A stretch of DNA of 64,000 bases from Tubulanus polymorphus (taxonomy: Eukaryota; Animalia; Nemertea). This document shows positions 40,092 to 55,730 of this stretch, in pieces. Made by a program: the position numbers and the translations under genes. A model generated the notes under the pieces. That model made no database searches, was not told the DNA's origin, and was given only the letters and a program-made list of their open reading frames with translations. The stretch is taken from contig NC_134031.1 in the NCBI RefSeq assembly GCF_964204645.1, forward strand, positions 15,797,807-15,861,806, written 5' to 3'. How positions within the stretch are numbered: the first letter of the stretch is position 1; the number at the start of each line of letters is the position of its first letter.

Positions 40092-40363
40092 AATACGGGT
40101 TATAGGCCTAACGTTCGTTACCGGAAGTAGGTATCAGTTTTCGCGTCAGCCAACTACATTTCAATGAAAATCCGTCGGTTCAAGTTTCCAGTAAGCATTT
40201 TCTCAAAAAATTGGGAAATCTTGGAAAAGGTGAGTGCGTGTATAGTTTTTGAGAAAATGCATACTGGAAAATTGAACCGACAGATTTTCATTGAAATGTA
40301 GTTGGTTGACATGAAAAAGGTTACCCACTTCCGGTAACGAACGTTAGGCCTATAACCCGTATT
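40092..40363. repeat. Long inverted repeat (~118-bp arms, 36-nt spacer)
   Basis: Arms 40092-40209 and 40246-40363; the outer 37 bp are perfectly complementary. Confidence 0.9.
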
Positions 40364-40469: not shown

Positions 40470-43400
40470 TTATAAGCCATCGAAATTCGCCGCTTTTTGT
40501 TTGAACGCCTCTTTCCGAGCCTTCGCCTCTTCCTCTTCTCTCCGACGTTCCTCTTGTTCCTGTTTGATTTCATTTTCGAATTTATTCGAATCGGTTTGAT
40601 CTTTTATCTGTAAAATGCAACATATAGAGTTATAGGAAATGACCAAACCTTGCAGAATCATATAAGCTTTTTACTCGGCACATTTTCTGACATCTGCATT
40701 ACAATATTCCACAAGTACTCAGGGTTTGACTTAAGGAATAAAAGCCACTTGTCTGCGGGACAAGCATATCGCTTGCCCCCTACAAAATCAACTCGCCCTA
40801 CATAGGCAGTCCGTATTGGTGGCGCTATCACCCTTTGCATTGAGTTGGAAAAAAGTTTTAAGACATAAAATTCCCCGAGCCCGGTGGACAAGTGATTATG
40901 ATAACCTACTTGCAATAATGAGAATATACTTGTCCCGGGCATTCGGACAAGTGCTTAGATCGGACCCTGAGTACTATAGCTTAAATGAGGTAATTTCATT
41001 GGTCAACAATATATCTGATATCTGTGATTCTCGAGCTGATTTTGTTGTTGTTATTATATTACTCATCAAGGACATATCATATCATTATGAAAGGGCTAGA
41101 GTACATCCAAAGTACACATGTATCTTTCATTTCCTTCCATCCTGAAAATCAATCTCAACATAACTAAACAAGTATCTTTACGAACTTAATCAATGATTCA
41201 AATAGATGAAAATCATGTTACGTATTTAGAAAATTCTCATTACTTACTTTACACTCGAAGAAGCTCTTAGCACCTTTCACTCCGACTTCCCCGACGTCAA
41301 TCTCGGACAGTCTGACTAAACTTAACAAACCAGAACCTTCTTCCAACTCGCCGAGCTGCGCTTTACGAAATATCAGCAAGAACTGCAAGAATATCATTTG
41401 AAAAAATAAAAATAAAATCTTACTCTTTCAGTGTCAAATCCAACTTCGTGTTCACGCTACGCTATTTAGAATATTCTCAATTCGGTGCATTACAATTTAC
41501 AGCGGACTAAGCGTCCACACTAGTGAAAATTCTGTTCAAAATCGGTCCATTTAATTTTCAACCAACCCAAGCACGTTCAAAATTCTAAAATGGACCCATT
41601 TCACGAGTGTGAATCGAAACTTCGTTTTTCATCGCCTGTCGATCACTTTTGCAAACAACCCACGAATAACAGCTGACCCAAAAGCTTTAGCTCTGGTTTG
41701 GTCTGTTTTAAATTTATCTCAGTCTCCGGAATATAGGCCATATTAGAACGTTGTTAGAATGTGGCTTTATACTCACTTCACGGAAGCTAATTACGCCATC
41801 GTTGTCTTCATCAACTTCAGCTATCATCGATTTCAATCCGATATGCGTTTGCGGTACCCCCAGTTTCTCCATCAATACCTTCATTTCCATTAAATCCAGA
41901 TATTTATTATTATCGGCATCATACCTGCAAATACGAGTTTAAAAATAGAGTTTCTGATTATAGAATCTTAGCTGCCGGTGGGGCGAAGATTTTCTATTCT
42001 AATTTTTTCTAGAGATTTATGTTTGAGGTTTAGGGATGAATTATTAGATCCCCACTTTTACTTATTGCTTAAAACTAACTAATCACAAGTTTTTATTGGA
42101 AATAGATTTGTCTATGCAGCTGTTGAAAAATAAAAAACAATTATCGGAAATTCACATTTATCACCAGTAACGTAAACAGATCATTTTTATATCACGAAGA
42201 TATACGGGAAATTATTCCCCAGACAGTTGACAATAACGAGCAGATAAAAGATTCAGTTACGCAATAAGATTCGCATAATTATGTCACATATCTTTCGAGC
42301 TAAATTCCTGGCACGAAGTATGACATAAACTTCAGCGAAATATTCACCCCGCATGACACGATAAACATTAAAACACATGAACAGATACATGATAATCAGT
42401 TTCTGATGATATATGACGGTGTTACACTATAGATATAAATGATACATGAATATCGGTATGACTTAACAATCAAACATTTGGTCTTCGGACAAACATCAAG
42501 GGCTGGACATTAGAGAGAGAGAGATATGTGTAGCATTTCTGCGCTTCAAATGAAAAAACATTGATAGTGTGGTGTACGCCATATATAGTAACAGCTAATA
42601 CCCACTGTTCGAACAGTTCTGATTCGGTGTCCTCGACGCACGGCGATAGCGGGGACCGTGGGGAGGCGCGGGGACTACGCGAAGGCTGGGCACCGAGCGG
42701 ACAGTCCTTCTTCGACGGAAACCTATAAAATAGACGATCGATAAAACCAGTTCCGCGTCGACCGGCGACTTAAAACAATCAACTGCTCTGTAAGAGGTTT
42801 CCCTAGACGAGTGTCTTGCAGAGGGGTGGATCAAGGGGTGCGCGCCCAATTTTTTCTGGCCGACTGACCCAAGAATTTTCTACTCCCCCCCCCAAAAAAA
42901 AGAAAATGGCCAGGTATCGTGAACATATTTCATTCCTAATTTCAACCAGGAAAGTGCTCAGAATGCGCCTTATTTTTCAAAGTTTTCTGGCCCCTACTTT
43001 TGACGTATTCGTCAATTACAGGCTACAAATAAGTAGTAACCCAAAATTCCATTACCCTTTTCCCAAAAGCTAAATCCACCCCAGGCTTTCAAATTCAAAT
43101 GAAGAATAGGCCACCACAAAAACCAGTTTTGAAAATTGCCAATACCAGTATGCAAAATTCAGTTGAAACACCACTGATCTGTTATTTAGTTTTTCTTCAT
43201 AATTGTGGGTTTTTTCTTCAATTCACTCTGTAGGACTTAGAGATTGCTGGTAAAATTAAACCAAACGCTGTTTTCCAAGCATTTCAAAGCCAAGGAATCA
43301 TAGCAAATTCGCAAGATGTAATGATTGTTTCTTAATAACAATTTACCAACATCTGCAACGAGTGTGCACCAGTAACTAGAGTTCTCTGAATCAGAAATCG

Positions 43401-44907
43401 AGCCTGGCAATTCATGAATCATTCACGAAATCATATTTAAATAATATTTGTGTTTTTATTGGATTGTTTGAACAGGACCCTATTAACCAGGTAATAACCA
43501 GAGTAAAGCGACCGCGTATTTGTTTCTGCAGCTGGGCTTGCTGCGAAAAGGTAGCAGCACATAGACTATTAAAACTCTATCAGATTAGCCTGGCCTATAT
43601 ATTAGTCACGACATAATGAAAATAGAAAAATCATGATATCAACACTTGACCCCATAAAAAGCGCGGAAATGAGCAATAATGCCTAAACCTTGAACTGTGC
43701 TTAAAAAACACAGTCAGGATAAATCACTCATAAAATTATCTTCAAAAGAAAACTTTTAATCTTTCTTTCATGCAAGTCTTATTCAGATAGGTCAAGGCCT
43801 ATCATTAACAGTTCATCTATACAAAGATTAGTCTAATATTAGTATTTCGCCGCTGTTCCCCAAACAAGGGGACTAACAACGTCTGGTATTCAGACTATAC
43901 AAGGATTAACATAAAATATGATGTCTAATCAGGGTCCAGTTCCACAGTTCCGAGTTAAGATTTGAATTTTTATTAACTCATATAAAATTAACTTACTTCT
44001 ACTCAAACTCACCAAGTGGAACTGGGTCCTGGATTTCTCATAGCATGATTAATTTCATTGGCCCCAAATGATCCGAATTAAGTGGATTCTATTGTATTTT
44101 CACCAGCACAACTTAGCATAATATGTCATGGTTTGATTTTATAGACAAACTAATAGGCAAAATTTTGGAGTGAAAACTATTAGGTCTATACCGGTTTTGT
44201 ACAACCCCAGTACATAATGTATGCTTGCACGTATAAAACATTCAGCTAACACCAGTCAACAAGGAAGTTATACCACGGGTAGTTCAGCACTTTCCTCACT
44301 TTGAAAGTAATACAGAGATCATCTGAAGGTCGGGAATTACCTCTGACTGGGAATTACCTTTTTACTACTCAAGACTGTAGGTCAAATGGTAATGAAAAAC
44401 AGTCATCATATTAAAGAGGGACACTTAAGACATCAGTGTAATCAATTTATTCAAACTTATTGTTAGCGTTATTGTTAACATTAGAGGCCTGTTGTTTCCT
44501 GACCTGTAGCTAACTGGACTGTCCTTCTATTAATTTTTAACAGCTTATCGTATCTTCAAAACATCGATAGCTCTTTTGCATATCGATTGTAAATTCTATT
44601 TCATATCTCACCCCACCCTGCCCTAAAACTCCCGTCCACAAATCAAATGTCATCACGCCCAATCAATCCTATCAGCTCTCTGAAGAAATCAAAACATTTT
44701 ATCCCAGCCTTTCATCAATCACATTTTCAGAAACAGTACTTACTTTTTAAACATTTTTTCGAAATCTTTGATTTGTTTCCTGGTAAATTCTTTAAACTCG
44801 ATGTACACATTGTTGACGACAGTTTGAGGAGCCCGCTGTTCAGCTTCGCCTTCGTTTACAGCGTTTCTATGCGCTAATTTCGCTGCTAATTCTGCCGACT
44901 CAGACAT
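40470..44907 (-). CDS. EFHD2: EF-hand domain-containing protein D (swiprosin/EFHD1/2), canonical isoform, 4 exons, ~194 aa
   Basis: Exons 44744-44907, 41777-41924, 41248-41382, 40470-40607. Motifs VYIEFKEFTRKQIKDFEKMFKKYD, LMEKLGVPQTHIGLKSMIAEVDEDNDGVISFREFLLIFRKA, LSEIDVGEVGVKGAKSFFE, coiled coil KFENEIKQEQEERRREEEE..FKQKAANF. Confidence 0.96.
40720..40969. mobile_element. MITE with CAGGG..CCCTG termini in EFHD intron 3
   Basis: AGTACT|CAGGGTTTGACTTAAG ... CTTAGATCGGACCCTG|AGTACT; internal CTTGTC/GGACAAG repeats. Confidence 0.6.
42606..42722 (-). CDS. Predicted 117-nt in-frame cassette exon in EFHD intron 1
   Basis: TTTTATAG acceptor, CA|GTGGGT donor, phase 2-2, stop-free, GC-rich island in an AT-rich intron. 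Encodes FPSKKDCPLGAQPSRSPRASPRSPLSPCVEDTESELFE(Q). Confidence 0.65.
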
Positions 44908-45295
44908 TGTTGTGTGAATCGGGTTACTGATTGCTAAATAACTAACTGTAGTTACCCCAAACGCGGTGGTCGGTAGAATAAACTGCTCTGGAACTTGTTA
45001 CATGTGTGTACACCTACCTCTACACATCTGTGTAGGCAGAAGTTTGGTTTTCGATACGCGCAAATTAAATTTATTTACTTCCGGGTTGCATACTCTGGCA
45101 AGCGAGGTTCTATTGAGAGAACGCGAAACGATATCCACGTCAACCATCAAAACTACCGATTCCAATAATCGGTAAAAATAATTGGTGAATTATTTCCATC
45201 ATAAAAGGGATATAGTAACGTTTCTGATAAAATTTTACTAAAATGTTCACATAACATTGATTTAAATAGTTTGTTAAAACCGTCTCGTTCAGCAT

Positions 45296-45367
45296 TCCCA
45301 TATGGTCTAGTGGTTAGGATTCCTGGCTTTCACCCAGGCGGCCCGGGTTCGATTCCCGGTGTGGGAA
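45296..45367 (+). tRNA. tRNA-Glu (anticodon TTC)
   Basis: 72 nt; acceptor stem TCCCATA/TGTGGGA; A box TGGTCTAGTGG; anticodon arm CCTGG-CTTTCAC-CCAGG; B box GGTTCGATTCC; T5 Pol III terminator at 45375-45379. Confidence 0.97.
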
Positions 45368-45490
45368 CGACATCTTTTTGCAGATACTAACTATACTTCA
45401 TGTTACAAGCTACCATCTACTTTTATGTTACTGAAATAAATTTTTACCTACCATCTACATATAATTAAACCAAACATCCTGTATACTTAC

Positions 45491-45648
45491 TTAATGCAAG
45501 AATCTTTCAATCTCTTCAAGTCCTTCAATGTGTAATGGCGATACTCTTCAGTAGGTACCCAACCATAATCAGTTAACTTTTTATCTAGTTTTCCTTCAGC
45601 GATTTGTTCCTGTCGGTCAAAAGCCTCTTGCAATTCAGGTGAAGCCAT
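45491..45648 (-). CDS. Predicted alternative (duplicated, diverged) first exon of the EFHD gene
   Basis: ATG-initiated, 52 codons plus AA, ending AA|GTAAGT in phase 2 like the canonical exon 1. Peptide MASPELQEAFDRQEQIAEG..EEYRHYTLKDLKRLKDSCIK aligns by eye with MSESAELAAKLAHRNAVNEG..IEFKEFTRKQIKDFEKMFKK. Confidence 0.75.
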
Positions 45649-46512
45649 AGTTGAAATGTAGCAAAAATCATTCGTTAGCCAAATCTATATAAACTTCCTG
45701 GTATAATTCCAAAAAAATGAATAAAATACGATAATGGCTCAGTTAAATCTGTTGTTTATTGGTGAATTGAATTTGCATCTGGCTGTCCTGTTATCTCACT
45801 TTTTAAAAAGTCTATTACCAAAAAGTTACACCTTGCATCAAGTAATTTGAACATTGAATACCAGTAAATCATCTCATAATATATGTAGGCCTACAAGCGA
45901 TCCATGGTTTTTATTCTTCTGTATAACAATAGTTGAAATAGCTGCTTTTCTTCGAGGGAAATTACAAGAATATATCGAATACGAGGTACGATACAGGACT
46001 GGGGGATATATGAACTCGACAGTTGCCTGAGAAATTCATTAAAAACTCAAAAATACATGTACATGTACATCATTTTTTCGAAATAATAGAATGGAATAAC
46101 TTCTAATGCAGTAACTGCTTCGGAATAGCACAGTAAATCCATGAGGCAAAATAAATATCTGGTTACTGAACATTATTGAAATTGTGATGTGTTTCGTGAT
46201 GGAACAGTTTTTAAACACATTTCTATATCACTAATCTAAGCCTCTAAGTTATATTTGTCATATATATTAGATTCAAGATTAAAATTTTACATATAATTGA
46301 CACAAAATATAGTAATAAACGAAGTGGATTTCTTTTCATGAAATTCATTCACGGATTTCGTGAAAACCAATCAGCGAAATTTGAGCCTTGTAAATATTGT
46401 TATTTCTCATGTTTGTCATAAATAATCTAATAACTTACAGATATCGACTTAACATTGTATTAACTTACAAAACATACCCGAAGAATACAGCGGAGAGACA
46501 CGTTGGAAATGT

Positions 46513-46553
46513 CTATGTATGTATGTATGTACGTACGTACGTACGTACGTACG

Positions 46554-46603
<50 letters not shown>
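46513..46603. repeat. Compound microsatellite (TATG)(TACG)(TACA)(TA)
   Basis: Direct read; lies in the predicted USP20 3' UTR. Confidence 0.9.
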
Positions 46604-46607
<4 letters not shown>

Positions 46608-47387
46608 TCATTTACAACACGGTGATAATTTACACGGTATATCGAGAACTTCTTTTTGAAATTTCCAATCGACTTAAAATGCAGAACACGGAATATATGT
46701 ACAATAGATCAATGATTGTAGTAAATAATAATAATAATATCACAGTCAGTGCCTATATCAACACTAACCTATACGTGAATATAATGCCACGTCTTTTTTA
46801 ACGAAAAACTGTGCCAATATCCAGCAATTTTCAGACGAAACATTCATTACCGATATGATATTTTCCCTGTTCGATTCGACCCGATGAAGCTTGACTTCAG
46901 ACACAAGATTTAGATGGATATTCATTTGTGAAAACACAAAAAATTGAACGACTAAGTTTCCATTCAGCGTGTAGAATAACAATCGTGTAAACCTCTATCT
47001 ACCGATATAATTTGATCGTTCTTTCCTTTGTTTTTGTGATATAAATTAACAAGTCAATAGACTATTTTCTTGACACTTGAAATATGTAGAAACTCTTTGT
47101 GTCTTCAATAGTTAACACACGCACACACAAATAACAGAAATAGAGATGCAGGGTTTTACAGATCAGAGAACCCTGTCCCTGATATTTCCCAGACCCATGA
47201 ACCAAAAATTCCTTGTAAGATTAAATCATAAGACATCCTCAGTGGAGGTTGTTTCTTTACGATCATCAGCAAGAACAACAAGATACCCAAAAATTCTAAT
47301 CCCCCAACTTTCAAGCAGAGTCAAAATTCTGTTGTTTTCCCCGATCTGTGAGAACCCTGAAGATGAAAGGTAAAGGGATGATTGTTC

Positions 47388-50300
47388 TTAAGTTTTAACT
47401 GGTTCGACCGATCTCTGTGCCGCGTCTCCAGCTCCGTCTTTAACGTCTGCCGATGTTGTTGTCGTCGTCGTCGTCGTCGATACGGATCCGTTGTCCTTGA
47501 ACACGAGTTCGGGGCCGCCCCCGTAAATGCCGTACAGGAACTGCCACATTTCCACCGACAGCTGTCCGTAATCCGACGTCGACTTCAGCATCTGTACGCC
47601 GTTCTTGGTCATAGCGATCTTTGAATTATCAATCGGGCCCGGCGCATCTGAAATATCAGACGTAGATAGATTGGATTTTAGTTGTCAGATTAACAACACA
47701 TAAACAGTCAACCCCCGATACCGCCTTCCCATATGCTGCCACCCCGCCTACCGCCAGGTTTTCTCAATGTACATCTCTGTACAAATACATAGTAAAACAC
47801 CCCCATATACTCTCTATACTGCCAAAATCCTTCTGCACCGATGTGGGCGGTATATAAGGGGTTGACTCTACTCCATAATATTGTCCCTTTTCTTCTTAAG
47901 TCAGAGCTTTTGTAACTGCGAAGATTTTTCAGACCTAAGAGTGATCTCCGAGTCATCATCTTTATTAAGTGTCATAGAAATATTTCAACATCCGAGTTCA
48001 AGTAGGACATACCAGGACCCTCACAAAGAACAATATAAGAGAGGTACCGGTACTTTAAGTACCGTACATACATCACAAAACTAAATATCTAAACTAAGAG
48101 GCTGTCTGTATAAAGGCATATGGCTATCTTTTGATGGTACAATAGAATTCGGATCATTTGGGACCAACAGAATTCATTTTCTTGTACGTTAATGAAAAGA
48201 TGGACTGCAAATTTCGTGCGTATAGACCAAATCCGGATTAAGCCAATCCAAATAAAGCGCATTAGACTGCAAATAACATGATATATGTTAAACGGTTATT
48301 CAAGGTCATCGGATCCGACTTGAGCGGAGTCTGCCCCGGAAATATCGTACTCACCATCATCTTTGCCTCGGACGAAGTTTTCCCAGTCCTTAAACCATGA
48401 CATACTAATAGTATAGATCACTTCAGGGTCGGCTTCATTACGAAATTCGTCGTTCAACTGAAAAATTATCGAAACAATTCATTAATACAATGCACCTCAG
48501 GGTTGAATCTAATTCGCTCATTCTCCGCGTCAATGTTACACTTACTTTAATGAATGTTTCCATTTCGAATTTTTGTCGCTTTAGCAATTTTTCGCTTTCC
48601 TCCTCGCACGTCTTACAAGGATACAGATGATTGACGGGTGGCCCGCCTCCAAATCTACACCGAAAACATACATATTCAAATTTTGCGTACTCGAATAGTC
48701 GGCGAATGTTTCGAATAAACGAAAATCTAAAATACCTTTCGTGTAGGAATTCCCAGACGTTCTGGGTCAGCGGCGTCACCAATTCGTCAACGTATTGAAC
48801 TTTAGAAGGTGGCACTCCGCCGTGTCTGCATAGGAAATCGTGGTTGCTGATCGGTCCAGGCTCGGCGAACGTGTTGAACTTATTTATCCATTGTTTGGAA
48901 ACGTAAAACTGCATGAGGCTCTCCTGAAAACGCAGCAGACGTTTAAATGAAATGAAACCCGAAAAATTGAATCATTTTTTAAAGTTGGCGGTTAAAAGAC
49001 TTATATTCTGAGAAGCTTTCAATTGATTGATGAGTAATTCTTAACAGCTTTGAGATTTTGACAATGTAAAGTGCTTTTAAGTAATAAATTATTATTTATA
49101 ATATAAATAATTCAAGGTGACTATTAGAATATAGTCGAAACATTGAATCAACTAGCGCATTTTCAGACTTTATATAATAACTTATTCTTCGTGGGATGCT
49201 CTACATATTATTGTCATAACATGGATATAGTTTTATCAATGGTCGCAACATGGATATAGTAAAAAATACACAAAGAGGATGTATTTTTGATAAAGTGTTT
49301 TATCAATGGTTAATAAATTGTAATTCTTGTCATTAATTCATGAAATAATTGCAGGAATCAGTTTTTCCCGAAGCTCGCTGTCAGTACCTCTCTCATTTCC
49401 ATCAGTTCCGACGCTTTCTGACGTAACGGAATCATCGCGTCGTTTCGTTTACGGTAGAACAGAACATACGCCTCGCAGCTATCGACGGTCGGTTCGTCGA
49501 CCTGCGTGACGTACTGGTCGTCGAACTCGTACCACTGATCGGATATCATGTTCAAACTGTACGACGTGTAGTGACCTCCGCCGGCCGTACCGTGATGACA
49601 GATCACCGCTATCAGATCGTAAACAGTCACATCGGATACGCAATCTATTCATATAATAGAAATGTTTACGTTATAATTACAACAATATTCCAACAATTTC
49701 ATGAATTCTCAAATTTTCCCCAAGTATTTCTACTTGGACTGGAACCTTGATGTGGTGAAGTAGCTCGTGCTTGTCGAGAATCCTAAAGGATATTCTGGTA
49801 GAAACTTACTCCCGGCATGTCTAACCAGGCCAGAGAGGTCAAGAGGTAATAGACAAATGTCAGTCCACTGGTCCCCCAGGTTGGGGGTTTAGCATAGGGC
49901 CGACAACCCTATCTTGTAAAAACATAATTGTTAAGGAAACTTCGATGAACTTAAGATAAAGAAGAAGTTTGTCACGGCTTTATGTCCCAGAAGGGATGAA
50001 GAGTATCAAGTGCAAGATTTCCTGGGTGATTTTTCCATTCTCCTTAGTTGAGCCTTCATAAAAATGAACAGATACCATCATAATACGGGTTTTTCGACAT
50101 TTTGGTAGTGACTGGTTGATAAAGGTAATTTTCAAGAAAAATTGCTGAAGAAAGTTGTATGGCCCCATGCCACGCGACGTGTAAAAACCATTTTCCAAAT
50201 ATTTCCTTGATTAGAGGAAGATATGAACATATTTCTGCACTGGAAAATATAATTTAAATTTTTTCCCAATTTTCCCCAAGTGTTTCCAGATGTTAGTGTT

Positions 50301-53300
50301 AGTAAGTAAAGTTTCGTGTCGGAATAAGTTCAATAGCTCACCTTTATGTAGATACGGCCCCATATCGAGACCTTCCATAGGAAACGAGACGTAGCTACTG
50401 ATTTTACTCGAGAACATGAATTCATGTCGTAATCGCTTCAAGTGAATGCATAATATTTCTGGTAGTTCGGTAACTTTGGAAAATTTAACACCATTTCGCA
50501 GCCTAAAAATGAGCAGTTGATTTGTTCCATTAGAGCAATTTAATTTACATTTCCAGTTTAAGCTAAATTCATGGCGCTTCTTTTTTTAAACGCTTACTTT
50601 TTACATCTCTCGCAGCTGTACATGTTATCACCTTTGAGTTCATCCGCCGAGAAAAATGCCGCCAAACAGTCTTGAAGCGTAATCGTCGGTCCCCAAAACC
50701 AGCTGAATACAATAAAAATGATTTATTTTTATTTTCCACTATCAACAAAAGGGATCTTTAGACATCGTAAAAACTGTTACAATAATGTTTATATAAATTG
50801 ATACCTCTAGTATGCGTTATTTAAAGGGTTCTGTGTGAGTCGATGTGCACTACATCATCAATGTTGGCGTTTCAAAATAACAACTACAATTGTGAATTCT
50901 GGCGTCTATTTCTTAATCAAACATATCTCATAACTCTTATTCTATTTTGAATCTTAATACTCATTTTTGAAAGGATATGCCCTACGTCATCATTACCTAT
51001 ATCGCGGCTAGACTGGTTGCCAGTTGACAATATCAAGCAATAGATAAGTAAATTTTTCAAATCGTCAATAAACTTCGAAGTTAATTTTCTTGTTTAATCA
51101 TGGCTTTCACCAAAACTGTCCACTATGTTACTACCTTTTCATCCAGCTCCACATCCAAGTAACCCATCCCTGTCGTAGGTTCACCTCTCCGCACGAACCC
51201 TTTCCAGACGTCTGCGTCGCATGTAAAAGATGTATATGATCTTTGCTCGGCAGCGGTAGAGACAAGTCTTGGAATGTTTCCTTCGTTGACGAGATCTACA
51301 CAATCATAAAAACACGAAAATCAACAGCTGAAACATTCTAATGGATAAACACAGGGGTCGATCCAGAGGCAGATTTTAACAGCAGTATAAAGAAATGAAA
51401 ATGGTAAGTTTCCATGCAGAGCGGGCATCAAGCTAAAACGGGGGACTGGAAGGACATTGAAGAAAATATAAGTTGAATCTTGAATCTTGATCTGCCCCTG
51501 AAACAAACAGCTTACCCTTTCACAGGTCAAACATTGCACCGAACTTAAGATCTTCCCATCAAATATATCAGATATAACGCTACGGTATTGCACAGTTTTC
51601 TTCTTTTTTGCTGCTGAAAATCAATGAAAAACAAACATGAAACTCTCTACTTCTGAGTATGATATAATCTGGGAACAAGTGATACTTCATTTTCAATCTA
51701 CTTTGCTTTGAATTTCTTTAGGTTCATACATTATCACAGGGCCTAAAAAATATACCTATTAACCCTCAAGCCGCCCGCATCCGCCCTGCCCATTACTCCT
51801 CAATCCGTACGAATCTACTCTGTCTGCTACGCAAAAACAGTTACGGTAGGATTCAAACCCATTAGCTTAGGATAAACTAGACACCCATCAAAATTCCGTA
51901 CAGAAATCAACATCTTCCTATTTGAAATTTTAGAATTTGAGATTCTGAGTATTTGGGGTATGAACAAATCATCGAAAATGAACTAACTTTAACTCAGAGT
52001 TAACTCCGACTCACAACTGTTGAACTGGGTCCTGAGTGCTAATAAACGGGTCCAATTTTCAATTTGTAGCCAGTAATTACTTCAGTTTATATCAAAAATT
52101 CATAAAGACTTTTTGGTAAATCAATAATTGAATTATTATTCATTGAAATGTTACCTTGACTAGAGGTATTTTTAGCTGCCGTTGAGTTTCTATTCTCCGA
52201 TAGTCGACGCGCTCGTTCTGTCAGTTTCTGCGATTGACGTTGTTGCAGCGACGACGACGATTGTTGTTCCAATTCGCACAACGCGTCGGTGTACTCGCCC
52301 CCGGTTTCCGACGTTGGGGTGTGTGCGTCGTCCTGACCCTGCATACTGATACCGCTGTCGGACGTCGCTGTCGCCATCGTCTGCCTGTACGACGTACTAT
52401 GCACGGTGAGGTCCGAATCTGGACTGTCTTCAATTTGCGTCACGGATTCCGTTTTTCTCTGCATTTCCGCGTCTGTTCGATCGTCGGTTTCTTCTTTGAC
52501 GTTTTCCGTTTCTTGTTTCTCTTCGATGGCGTCGTCGCGAGCAGACGGATTCACCAGTCGCTCTTTCTCGGTCGGCTCGGCGACGTTTCTGTCATCGTTT
52601 TTCCGCCCGCCCTTCATCGCGCGTTTGTCTTTTGCCGCTTTGCGCGTGCTCCATCGACCGATGCCGGCGTGCGAGTCGACCCCGGCGGCATCGACAACGC
52701 CTTCGTCGCTTGAATCGCCGGTTCGCTCGATCGAGCCTCGTTCGCTGCTCAATCCCGAGTCGCACGTCTCGTACTCCTCGACGTCGGACTGCGCGCCTTG
52801 CGATTCCGTCGGTATTTGATGCTGCTGATGCGCCGTGATGCCTGTCATCGGCTCGATTACCGTCTCTTCGACGATTTCGGGCGGTTCTTCAACGAACCAG
52901 TCGGGTTCAACTTGTTTCAGCTCTTCGTGAATTTGATCCATAAAACACCGTAAAAACTCCTGCGTATCCTGAAAATATACAGACGCAATTTGACATGAAT
53001 AGAATTCCTACCAGATCAAGAATCTAAAATTCCCTCCTAACTCCCTGATCCCCCTTGACCAAAAATTCCCTGATTAAACTATGAGATATCCTAAGTGGGG
53101 GCTGTTTCTTATCAAGAGGTTCCTTGTGCTAATCTGTCAGCATGATGCCAAAAATTTACTTTCCCGCCGATTTTCAAGATCATTCATTTATTACATACAC
53201 ATTAGGGGAGGGGTAAGTGCAATTGCGTACTGTAATGCTTAATTCACATGAAAAGATGGCCGATTTTGCGTACAGGAGGAGAGGGGGGTTGAAAAAGTCA

Positions 53301-55730
53301 AATTTTATGCGTAAGTAATAAATGATGATACCATAGGACAAAATAATCACAAAATTCTCCCACTTCCTGATTAGTAAAGACCCTTGATGAACGAAGAAAA
53401 TAGTACACACTTGTTGACTGTATCCTTTAAACATCGGATGAACGAGTTTGATCGCGTTCAGAACCGACGACGGAACCATGTAACTCGGGCGTCTGCGATG
53501 CCACATTTCCGAAACCAACTTCAGATAACTTCGACACAACATCGGTTTCTTATCGGTTCGCACGAATCCGGCGCAGTCGAGGAAGTATCGCGTCAGCGGC
53601 GGGCTGAAAAATAACGAAAATCCACTGTTTCATCGAGCACTCTAATTCCACAGAGGAGATAAATGAACTCTGAAATCTAAACATTGTTTTACACAGGGTT
53701 CTTACAGATTAAACTCAGAATTTGAGGGGTCCATGATTTTTATCCACGGCACTCCCTACATACGCAATTAATAGAACAATGTCATGAAAACAATCATAGA
53801 TCCTCCTTGACTAGCATGGAAAATTAGGTCCCACAAATTGAACATTTAGCAACTAGTGTTTATCACCGGGGTTTTTCTCAGCAACTAATCTAACTAATGG
53901 TGAAAATTTAAGCCATGTATCATTGAAAACTTAATTTCTTTTCGGCATCTTGAAATACCTACGAATGAAGGTAATTGCCTTTTTCTTGATCTTTTTAAAA
54001 AAAAAAAAAAAAACACATTTTCTATTCATTGTTTTTTCCCCAGATTTTTCACATTTCAGGACCAGAGTCTTACCAGTTTGACAGAGCCTGTAAAGCGGCG
54101 TTCATATAACACGTATTGCCGAGGTTCTGAAGGCCGGTCAGACCGCGTGGTCGTTTGTTCTCATCGTCGTCATCCGTTTCAGAATCACACACCGAGTTCG
54201 AATCCGACAAACTCAACGTACGACGGCTTTTAATCGGCGAACCTTCGGAAAATCCGACGCCGCTTTCATCTTCCGGAATACTGCAAAAATTACGAGAATA
54301 AGAGTCATTAGTGATGAGGCTTATACAGCGCTATAAAATGCAGCCAGGCTGCTTTTTAAAGCGTTAAAGATATGCTTCCATTAGCCTACATGGCCACACT
54401 TGGCCATCAGGTCTTCCATTTTATAACACAAAATTCCACGCGTGAATCTGCCGCAGGTGAATGGGGAAATTTCTCTGCTTAAAATTTGTTACTATGAATT
54501 GATTTTTCATGGATCACATATCGATAAAGAAGAAACCATGCTTGATGCCATTTCAAAATTCTAGTTTTTCAAGTTTTGGGCAAAATTTCTCCGAAACTTT
54601 TTTACAGATTCCCCGAGTCATCCTGGTCGGCGGCCACTCCAAAGTACAGTTTACTACAGGGGCCAGTTGCACAGTCGTGACTTAAGTCCAAAAGTGGTCT
54701 TAAATCTTAAGACTGATCTTAAGTTGTTAGATTAGCCATAGAACAAAGTTGATCTTAGACTCATCTTAATTCTAAGCCATGACTATGCAACCGGTCACAG
54801 AGGAACAACAAGGGCCAGGTTTGGGAGACTGACATTTATTTACTGGTCTATAGTTACTCACTTGAATACGGGCAAATTTCTACCGGGGAAAACTTCTATT
54901 TCACACGTGTAGCACCAAACTCTCATAGTCGTCAAATTCAATGTCACACAATGCTTTGATATCTACATAAGAAAACCACTTTCACTAAATATCTGCTGGA
55001 AGTGTTTCGGCGCTTCCATGTCGAACTTTACTCTATCTATCCATTTCAATGGCCAGTTGTGGAAAAGTTGGTTACAGTAAACACTACGGGTTGACAAACG
55101 ATTTCAATCGTCACCGTCATCATCATCGGATCACCATCAACCACTGGTTAACTAACTTTTTGAGCTGGCACCTGATTTTCAAATTTTCTACTTTACCTCG
55201 GCGTGCGATGAACTGTGGTCCTCTGCTGATTCCCCGCAGCCGATGTAGAGACATTTATTGTATAAACAGAGCCACAGATTGGGTCCATCGGCTTGACACG
55301 CCTCACACTGAGCACTCTGTAATCATAATGCATGTACAATATTAACGTTTTACAAGTCTAAAATACTGCAGGTTAACACGATATCTCGATTAACAAAATT
55401 TCAATAAATTTTTGGGGAAGAGGATATTGTGCCAATACGGCATTCTTTTTGTTTGAACGCTATACATTTATATTGCCTATTGCTCATTCCGATTGGATTG
55501 GCAATATCGTGTTCACAAGAATTACGCTATATTGTGGCAAAATATTGATTTCCTTCCCATAAAAAAGCTCATATCGATCTAACATCTGCATTTATTCAGC
55601 TGCAGTGATGAATCAGCAGCCTCTCCGCCGCCTGTGATGAACCTACCTCTCTTTTATTGCGCACATCTTTCAAAGTGAAGTTTCCACATGTCACAACATG
55701 CGGACAGTTGCTGTGTCCCGCTGACTGCAT
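47388..55730 (-). CDS. USP20: Ubiquitin carboxyl-terminal hydrolase USP20/33, 15 coding exons, ~986 aa
   Basis: Exons 55647-55730, 55197-55316, 54862-54962, 54074-54280, 53411-53603, 52155-52968, 51516-51613, 51135-51295, 50598-50702, 50342-50502, 49388-49644, 48736-48923, 48546-48654, 48355-48457, 47388-47647. zf-UBP ([19 protein letters not shown]), Cys box [30 protein letters not shown], His box [13 protein letters not shown], two DUSP domains ([23 protein letters not shown]). Probable non-coding exon with donor at 55935. Confidence 0.96.
49742..49940 (+). mobile_element. Possible 5' fragment of an RTE-clade LINE or related SINE in USP20 intron
   Basis: GGTCCCCCAGGTTGGGGGTTTAGCATAGGGCCGACAACCCTATCTTGTAAAAA resembles, from recall, the 5' UTR motif of RTE elements; no ORF follows. 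Confidence 0.45.
54660..54797. mobile_element. CWG-flanked MITE family A
   Basis: CAG|GGGCCAGTTGCACAGTC ... GACTATGCAACCGGTCA|CAG with CTTAAG-rich internal repeats; another copy at ~23257-23406. Confidence 0.8.

What the first reader, a model, noticed from the sequence alone, without database searches (positions are those of the whole stretch)
44744..45648. EFHD/swiprosin gene carries a second, diverged duplicate of its first coding exon
Seen: about 580 bp upstream of the canonical ATG is an exon absent from the ORF track (45648-45491, - strand). It encodes MASPELQEAFDRQEQIAEGKLDKKLTDYGWVPTEEYRHYTLKDLKRLKDSCI-K and ends AA|GTAAGT, the same phase-2 split codon as canonical exon 1. The two peptides align end to end (S.EL..EG..E[FY]..[FY]T.K.[IL]K). 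No other downstream exons for it are visible nearby, so it would splice to shared exon 2 (41924). Known: this segment includes the region before EF1 and the entering helix of EF-hand 1. Inference: exon duplication gave two promoter-selected isoforms (~192 vs ~194 aa). In the distal one the conserved Phe of FxxYD becomes Cys (SCIKYDAD vs MFKKYDAD), which could alter Ca2+ sensing or F-actin bundling. An intact frame despite heavy divergence argues for selection.
Basis: partly seen in the sequence, partly recalled or inferred. Interest (0 to 1): 0.8.

Follow-up and report, generated by a model that had tools for sequence, protein, structure and literature searches.

The report
Duplicated alternative first exon of EFHD
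The single EFHD/swiprosin gene of the ribbon worm Tubulanus polymorphus has two alternative first coding exons. The upstream one is an old, heavily diverged copy of the normal one, and the isoform it makes is already a public RefSeq gene model.

Summary
On the minus strand, 45648-45491 is an ATG-started 52-codon frame ending AA|GTAAGT. That is the same split-codon phase as canonical exon 1 (44907-44744).

Joined to exon 2 at 41924, it gives a 192-aa protein. [quoted passage not shown] The canonical 194-aa form is isoform X1, XP_074654031.1. So the exon and isoform are already annotated.

The new part is the origin of the exon, and the evidence supports it. BLASTP sees no similarity between the two exons. 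However, a profile of 50 EFHD N-termini from other animals picks out only these two among 723 open frames in the window. Exon 1a scores about 15 bits, end to end, and 0 of 20,000 shuffles reach that score. Its two halves match separately.

Exon 1a keeps most residues that pack the actin-binding segment onto the EF-hands in human EFhd2. It changes four otherwise invariant or near-invariant residues, including Phe to Cys before the EF1 loop.

Expression, age and function therefore remain untested. Interest is modest.

The parts
45491..45648 (-). Exon 1a: the distal alternative first coding exon. ATG at 45648-45646, 52 codons plus AA, donor GT at 45490-45489 within GTAAGT.
   Evidence: It is identical to residues 1-52 of XP_074654032.1 (P0270). 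Family-profile match of 14.7 bits.
45649..45691 (-). Putative core promoter and very short 5'UTR of exon 1a. TATATAG lies at 45691-45685. An initiator-like CTACATT lies at 45661-45655, with its A at 45659, 32 nt downstream of the first T of the TATA.
   Evidence: Read by eye, using general consensus knowledge. This is an inference and was not tested.
44744..44907 (-). Exon 1b: the canonical first coding exon. ATG at 44907-44905, 54 codons plus AA, donor GTAAGT.
   Evidence: It matches residues 1-54 of XP_074654031.1 (P0365). Family-profile match of 88-90 bits.
41777..41924 (-). Shared exon 2. It encodes the EF-hand 1 loop and exiting helix and the start of EF-hand 2. Its first base G completes the split AAG (Lys) codon of either first exon.
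   Evidence: Pfam AIF-1 and EF-hand matches.
41248..41382 (-). Shared exon 3 (45 codons). It encodes the end of EF-hand 2 and the ligand-mimic helix region.
   Evidence: It aligns with the family in A2 and A4 and is contained in P0270 and P0365.
40470..40607 (-). Shared exon 4 coding part (45 codons plus TAA). It encodes the C-terminal coiled coil.
   Evidence: It aligns with the family in A2 and A4.

Best explanation
The window comes from Tubulanus polymorphus (Nemertea). Its single-copy EFHD/swiprosin gene has two alternative first coding exons in tandem on the minus strand, about 0.6 kb apart.

Each first exon starts with its own ATG. Each ends in the same split Lys codon just before the Tyr-Asp that opens the EF-hand 1 loop. 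Each joins the same exon 2. Exon 1b has no acceptor site of its own role to play here, because it is a first exon. A transcript that starts at the distal promoter therefore splices 45491 to 41924 and skips exon 1b.

The products are isoform X1 (194 aa, canonical) and isoform X2 (192 aa).

Exon 1a is an old tandem duplicate of exon 1. It has diverged to about 17-20% identity, but it still encodes the same three elements in the same order:
- the N-terminal 'EL...R...I.EG' motif;
- the aromatic/proline segment that in human EFhd2 packs on helix 4 (actin-binding site 1);
- the entering helix of EF-hand 1.

X2 therefore swaps the regulatory N-terminus and helix 1 of EF1, and keeps both Ca2+ loops, the ligand-mimic helix and the coiled coil.

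Shown here: the sequence anatomy, identity with the RefSeq models, the statistical homology, and the single-copy status. Inferred: use of a separate promoter, actual expression level, and any change in Ca2+ affinity or actin binding.
For: - **Anatomy and phase:**
- **Identity with public models:** P0270 (192 aa, XP_074654032.1, isoform X2) equals exon 1a plus exons 2-4. P0365 (194 aa, XP_074654031.1, isoform X1) equals exon 1b plus exons 2-4.
- **Homology, profile test:** the profile uses 50 non-Tubulanus EFHD N-termini. It scores exon 1a at 14.7-15.3 bits over profile positions 7-54 of 59. The next best of 723 window ORFs scores 5.9 bits. None of 20,000 shuffles reaches the exon 1a score.
- **Homology, halves:** the N half scores 10.4 bits (0 of 5000 shuffles reach it). 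The C half scores 4.2 bits (2 of 5000).
- **Homology, anchored test:** only exons 1a and 1b pass among 2448 phase-matched GT sites.
- **Alignment:** MAFFT places exon 1a collinearly under the family.
- **Copy number:** the gene and both first exons are single copy in the 268-Mb genome.
- **Structural contacts:** exon 1a keeps the human EFhd2 contact positions 80 (aromatic), 82 (Pro), 85 (Glu), 86 and 89 (aromatic) and 95 (Lys). These contacts are described in PMC5156911.
- **Predicted structure:** the AlphaFold model of X2 has a confident EF1 entering helix at residues 41-54 and the same helix layout as X1. The best structural matches are the EFhd2 and EFhd1 crystal structures.
Against: - I saw no RNA evidence.
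- The only run guessed to be RNA (X5, 2015) holds next to none of the exon 1a words. The four runs that do hold it are of unknown kind.
- RefSeq X2 is a computed model, and I could not inspect its supporting evidence.
- The pairwise similarity is invisible to BLASTP. A 15-bit profile score is not significant genome-wide.
- Exon 1a changes otherwise invariant or near-invariant residues: Tyr83 to Thr, Glu88 to His, Arg91 to Leu and Phe101 to Cys in human numbering. This would also fit relaxed constraint.
- No relative carrying exon 1a was found in the word search, among the 120 best-scoring hits listed by each of two profile searches, or in the metagenome scan.
Confidence: 0.72

Rival explanations
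1. Exon 1a is a real alternative first exon but not a duplicate. Any first exon that splices straight onto the EF1 loop must supply an amphipathic entering helix, so the resemblance would be convergence under structural constraint.
For: Exon 2 starts right at the Tyr-Asp of the EF1 loop, so a helix is required there. The C-terminal half alone scores only 4.2 bits. There is no DNA-level similarity in the exons or their flanks. BLASTP finds nothing.
Against: The N-terminal half is not part of the EF-hand. It still matches the family motif on its own at 10.4 bits, and 0 of 5000 shuffles reach that. The match is collinear over the whole exon, with nearly equal length and identical phase. Exon 1a keeps the Trp/Phe80 and Pro82 equivalents, which are family features lying outside helix 1.
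Confidence: 0.1
2. Exon 1a is a decaying relic of a duplication. It is still spliceable, so it enters a gene model through rare transcripts, but it is not maintained for function.
For: Four otherwise invariant or near-invariant family residues are replaced, including the Phe before the EF1 loop. The 2015 run guessed to be RNA lacks the exon. No relatives with this exon were found.
Against: The frame, the ATG and a consensus GTAAGT donor are all intact despite about 80% amino-acid divergence. A neutral relic that old would be expected to have stops or frameshifts. The hydrophobic and packing positions are kept selectively. The model predicts a confident helix 1.
Confidence: 0.1
3. Exon 1a is a chance open frame next to a chance GTAAGT, drawn into a computed gene model without real transcripts.
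For: Open frames of this length are common in AT-rich DNA (723 of 40 aa or more in the window). The TAA inside GTAAGT automatically fixes the 'same phase' reading. A 15-bit profile hit occurs by chance several times per genome.
Against: It is the only non-self hit in the window in two different tests. It lies on the right strand, 0.6 kb upstream of the exon it resembles. It matches in both halves. It has been modelled independently as an isoform in RefSeq.
Confidence: 0.05

Closest known systems
RefSeq models XP_074654031.1 (isoform X1, 194 aa) and XP_074654032.1 (isoform X2, 192 aa), EF-hand domain-containing protein D2 homolog, Tubulanus polymorphus
   Same: They are this locus. X2 is residue for residue exon 1a plus exons 2-4. 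X1 is exon 1b plus exons 2-4.
   Different: The records, as far as the names returned here show, give only isoform labels. They do not say that the two first exons are homologous duplicates, nor what part of the protein is swapped.
Human EFhd2/Swiprosin-1 core domain (PDB 5I2L and related entries; PMC5156911) and EFhd1/Swiprosin-2 (PDB 7CLT)
   Same: [quoted passage not shown] These crystal structures are the best structural matches of the X2 model. Exon 1 of the worm gene corresponds to human residues up to 103, which means everything before the EF1 loop.
   Different: Vertebrates have two EFHD genes, EFHD1 and EFHD2 (title of PMC3036668, listed). That they diversified the family by gene duplication is my inference. 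The worm has one gene and diversifies only the first exon. Exon 1a lacks Tyr83, Glu88, Arg91 and Phe101 of the human protein.
Tandem exon duplication giving alternative, mutually exclusive exons (a general, well-described mechanism; other cases in this same genome are noted by the scan, e.g. s1-487468 and s1-503601)
   Same: The exons are adjacent, in the same orientation and phase, of near-equal length, and homologous. Only one of them appears per mRNA model.
   Different: Here the duplicated unit is the first coding exon with its start codon. The choice would therefore be made by promoter use rather than by competition between splice sites. Divergence is far greater than in typical mutually exclusive pairs.

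Membership tests
EFHD/swiprosin (EF-hand domain-containing protein D) family | Two consecutive EF-hands of the AIF-1/EFHD type | tested here: met
   Exon 2 matches Pfam AIF-1 (PF21008, E 1.3e-10; 42.1 bits, below the 50-bit cutoff). It passes the cutoffs of EF-hand_1, EF-hand_7 and EF-hand_6. The Pfam domains precomputed for P0270 include PF21008, PF13499, PF13405 and PF00036.
EFHD/swiprosin (EF-hand domain-containing protein D) family | Full-length similarity to EFHD proteins, including the ligand-mimic helix and the C-terminal coiled coil | tested here: met
   P0270 scores 319 bits against the family profile (E 2.3e-90). It is 45-56% identical to 40 family members from other species. The model shows a long C-terminal helix at 137-189. 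The best structural matches are EFhd2 and EFhd1 crystals.
EFHD/swiprosin (EF-hand domain-containing protein D) family | Conserved N-terminal region: the EL..KL.RR..INEG motif and the FNPYTEFKEFSRKQIK segment before EF1 | tested here: met
   Exon 1b scores 88-90 bits. Exon 1a scores 14.7-15.3 bits, a weak but collinear match, with invariant or near-invariant positions 83, 88, 91 and 101 changed. The feature is fully met by X1 and only in diverged form by X2.
Alternative first exons that arose by tandem exon duplication | The two exons are homologous | tested here: met
   Profile and anchored-alignment tests with empirical and shuffle nulls. This is not detectable by BLASTP and is not significant genome-wide.
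Alternative first exons that arose by tandem exon duplication | Same orientation, adjacency, same donor phase, similar length, same downstream acceptor | tested here: met
   Both exons are on the minus strand, 584 bp apart. Both end AA|GTAAGT. They have 52 vs 54 full codons. Both join at 41924.
Alternative first exons that arose by tandem exon duplication | Each mRNA carries one of the two exons (transcript evidence) | tested here: inconclusive
   RefSeq models X1 and X2 each carry one.
Alternative first exons that arose by tandem exon duplication | A separate promoter for each first exon | not testable with these tools
   I have only a TATATAG at 45691-45685 and an initiator-like CTACATT at 45661-45655, both read by eye. 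CAGE or 5' RACE is needed.

The most novel reading that the evidence does not exclude
Isoform X2 is a functionally specialised EFHD. By swapping only the first exon, the worm would make, from one gene, a second Ca2+ sensor with altered EF-hand 1 behaviour and an altered actin-binding site 1. The EF1 change comes from Phe to Cys and Met to Ser at the end of the entering helix. The actin-binding-site change comes from Tyr83 to Thr, Glu88 to His and Arg91 to Leu. This would be an exon-level counterpart of the vertebrate EFHD1/EFHD2 split, with its own promoter and tissue pattern.
Probability: 0.3. Interest if true: 0.4.

Novelty: already known. Interest (0 to 1): 0.22.

Why it matters

What this work adds is small but concrete:
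- The two first exons are homologous, so the isoform pair arose by tandem duplication of the first coding exon.
- The swap covers exactly the disordered N-terminus, the segment called actin-binding site 1 in human EFhd2, and the entering helix of EF-hand 1. Both Ca2+ loops are left untouched.

If X2 is expressed in a defined tissue, it offers a natural experiment on how the pre-EF1 region tunes Ca2+-dependent actin bundling in this family. Otherwise it is an ordinary example of a known way of making isoforms.

Tried and rejected
- **RNA reads.** The look-up of sequencing runs with the exon 1a region gave four holders of unknown kind from one study, and one run guessed to be RNA that holds next to none of the words. 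Local whole-window steps did include them: the composition profile, and the scripts that scanned GT sites and scored six-frame ORFs against my own profile.
- **Word search with exon 1a alone.** No candidate in the 29-91 aa range.
- **Big representative search with exon 2.** Mostly genomic read-through ORF fragments, with nothing above 78% identity except an 87% match over a 38-residue fragment. It was useful only as a source of helper sequences.
- **Profile search A2.** It was dominated by vertebrate helper rows, so only vertebrates were listed. It was redone as A4.
- **The look-up of encoding contigs for P0270 and P0365.** Nothing on record.
- **Metagenome scan with exon 1a.** No relative found.
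- **DNA alignment of the two exon regions with flanks.** No similarity beyond background.
- **Genome-wide profile search.** It did not list exon 1a and showed that about 15 bits is not significant at genome scale.
- **Pfam on exon 1a alone.** Only sub-threshold noise, YqcI_YcgG and DUF6844.
- **Spliced models.** I searched the spliced model exon by exon, by reference, and never assembled or typed the joined protein. The full-length isoforms used later are the database's own entries, P0270 and P0365.
- **Other isoform pairs.** Among the 364 proteins fetched, no other gene shows a pair of homologous alternative N-termini. That sample is small.

Full report
**What is there.**
- On the minus strand, 45648-45491 reads from ATG through 52 codons plus the two bases AA and is followed by GTAAGT.
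- The canonical first coding exon of the gene runs 44907-44744. It has 54 codons plus AA, followed by GTAAGT. The upstream donor lies 584 bp above the canonical ATG.
- Exon 2 begins at 41924 with the G that completes the AAG codon, followed by Tyr-Asp and the first EF-hand loop.
- Exons 3 (41382-41248) and 4 (40607-40473, stop at 40472-40470) complete the gene.
- Exon 2 matches Pfam AIF-1 below its cutoff and passes three EF-hand models.

**Organism and public annotation.**
- I searched the spliced model exon by exon, by reference, and did not assemble the joined protein.
- A word search with exon 1a alone found nothing in its length range.
- I then built a profile from separate rows for the five exons plus three helper proteins (alignment A4). 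Its best hit was P0270, 192 aa, at 319 bits.
- P0270 is residue for residue exon 1a plus exons 2-4. [quoted passage not shown]
- Its cluster mate P0365, XP_074654031.1, isoform X1, 194 aa, is exon 1b plus exons 2-4.
- The gene is single copy. Exons 1a, 1b and 2 each hit only this locus in the 268-Mb assembly, apart from one distant EF-hand gene on another contig.

**Is exon 1a a duplicate of exon 1?**
- Pairwise, the signal is weak. BLASTP gives no alignment at E<=100. Smith-Waterman against composition-preserving shuffles gives p about 0.01.
- Two tests with better power are clear.
- First test: the duplication hypothesis predicts similarity in register with the donor. I scored ungapped alignments anchored at the exon end. 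The window has 2448 GT sites, on both strands, with 20 open codons upstream in that phase. Only exon 1b itself and exon 1a reach the observed score.
- Second test: I built a profile HMM from the N-terminal regions of 50 non-redundant EFHD proteins of other animals, with no Tubulanus sequence. I scored it against all 723 six-frame open frames of 40 aa or more in the window.
  - Exon 1b scores 88-90 bits.
  - Exon 1a scores 14.7-15.3 bits (E about 1e-3 for that set), aligned over profile positions 7-54 of 59.
  - The next decoy scores 5.9 bits. None of 20,000 shuffles of exon 1a exceeds 12.7 bits.
- The two halves match their own parts of the profile independently. Residues 1-24 score 10.4 bits (0 of 5000 shuffles reach it). 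Residues 25-53 score 4.2 bits (2 of 5000).
- The N-terminal motif is not part of the EF-hand. Convergence forced by the need for an entering helix therefore does not explain it.
- Caveat: at genome scale 15 bits is not significant. A whole-genome profile search listed exon 1b and an unrelated 15.8-bit hit with E 4.6. The inference depends on the context: the same strand, 0.6 kb upstream of the exon it resembles, the same phase, the same length class, and independent modelling as a first exon.
- There is no residual DNA similarity in the exons or flanks, so the duplication is old.

**What the swap changes.**
- In human EFhd2 numbering, exon 1 covers everything up to residue 103, just before Tyr104-Asp105, which opens the EF1 loop.
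- The crystal-structure paper (PMC5156911) reports these contacts:
  - Phe80 (written Pro80 in the paper's main text and Phe80 in its figure legend), Pro82, Phe86 and Phe89 pack on helix 4.
  - Tyr83, Glu85 and Glu88 hydrogen-bond to Lys95, Arg151 and Arg158.
  - This segment is actin-binding site 1.
  - Phe101 is among the residues whose NMR signals shift on Ca2+ loss.
- In register with the donor, exon 1a has Trp, Pro, Glu, Tyr, Tyr and Lys at positions 80, 82, 85, 86, 89 and 95. It has Thr, His, Leu, Ser and Cys at positions 83, 88, 91, 100 and 101.
- In the 50 sampled family members, positions 88 and 101 are invariant and 83 and 91 are nearly so. My filter for choosing family members required the E-aromatic-x-acidic-aromatic motif, so the invariance of positions 85-89 is partly by selection.
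- Exon 1b has itself lost the aromatic at position 80 and the proline at 82, and exon 1a keeps both. This again suggests an old split.
- AlphaFold models built with the same family alignment give the same helix layout for both isoforms. Both have a confident EF1 entering helix: X2 residues 41-54 with pLDDT about 91, and X1 residues 43-56. The X2 model's best structural matches are the EFhd2 and EFhd1 crystal structures.
- X2 therefore looks like a foldable EFHD with a remodelled pre-EF1 region. It does not look like a broken one. Whether Ca2+ affinity or actin binding changes is inference only.

**Promoter and neighbours.**
- Upstream of exon 1a, a TATATAG at 45691-45685 lies 32 nt before the A of an initiator-like CTACATT at 45661-45655. 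That would give a 5'UTR of about 11 nt (read by eye, untested).
- The next gene upstream on the same strand is a USP20/33-like deubiquitinase. Its coding region ends near 47390.
- An AATAAA at 45760-45755 sits only about 65 nt above that TATA. Read-through from the neighbour is therefore an alternative source of exon 1a transcripts.
- A tRNA-Glu(TTC) gene lies on the opposite strand at 45296-45368, between the two first exons.

**RNA evidence.**
- I obtained none.
- The run search with the exon 1a region listed four holders of unknown kind from one study. It also listed one 2015 run, guessed to be RNA, that holds next to none of the words.
Only local whole-window steps touched them: the composition profile and the GT-site and ORF scripts.
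- From my own knowledge, RefSeq alternative isoform models are normally made only with transcript support. I could not check that for this record.

**Relatives.**
- No other nemertean EFHD appeared among the listed hits. The nearest listed proteins to exons 2-4 are cnidarian.
- Exact look-ups of both isoforms found no other contigs.
- A metagenome scan found nothing.
- The age of the duplication and selection on exon 1a therefore could not be tested.
- Among the 364 proteins fetched, no other gene shows a homologous pair of alternative N-termini, but the sample is small.
- The literature searches returned nothing on this exon pair or on exon duplication in EFHD genes.

**Verdict.**
- The isoform itself is already annotated. 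The homology of the two first exons is a small addition.
- Function and expression remain open.
- This is a correct reading of an ordinary kind of isoform diversification, and it is of modest interest.

Noticed in passing
window 45296-45368 (+): A tRNA-Glu (anticodon TTC) gene lies between the two alternative first exons, antisense to the EFHD gene. It therefore sits inside intron 1 of the X2 transcript and just upstream of the exon 1b promoter region.
   Followed up: partly
window 47390-53600 (-), and 45755-45760: The upstream neighbour on the same strand is a USP20/33-like deubiquitinase, with USP catalytic and DUSP-like ORF pieces. Its coding region ends near 47390. An AATAAA at 45760-45755 lies only about 65 nt above the TATA-like box of exon 1a. 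The neighbour's 3' end and the distal EFHD promoter are therefore nearly abutting, and read-through transcripts are conceivable.
   Followed up: no
window 42600-42900 (-): A GC-rich island (GC 0.50-0.61 against about 0.33 around it) lies inside intron 1. It holds the 117-nt 'SP-rich cassette exon' of another first-reader note (s1-516512). No protein containing such a cassette appeared among the best hits of the profile search. There it should have scored about like X1 and X2.
   Followed up: partly
window 40092-40209 and 40246-40363: An inverted repeat of 118 nt per arm, 92% complementary, with 36 nt between the arms, lies about 100 nt downstream of the EFHD stop codon. It is probably in the 3'UTR and looks like a MITE-type insertion or a long hairpin.
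   Followed up: partly
window 46530-46610: A compound microsatellite of TA, GTAT/ATGT and GTAC/ACGT repeats lies in the intergenic or 3'UTR space between the USP gene and exon 1a.
   Followed up: no
G000:C12:9240380-9240463 (-) and G000:C8:12960605-12960745 (-): There is a weak 15.8-bit match of the EFHD N-terminal profile (positions 37-59) on contig 12. There is also a 38%-identical EF-hand exon on contig 8, possibly an AIF-1-like gene. Neither was examined.
   Followed up: no
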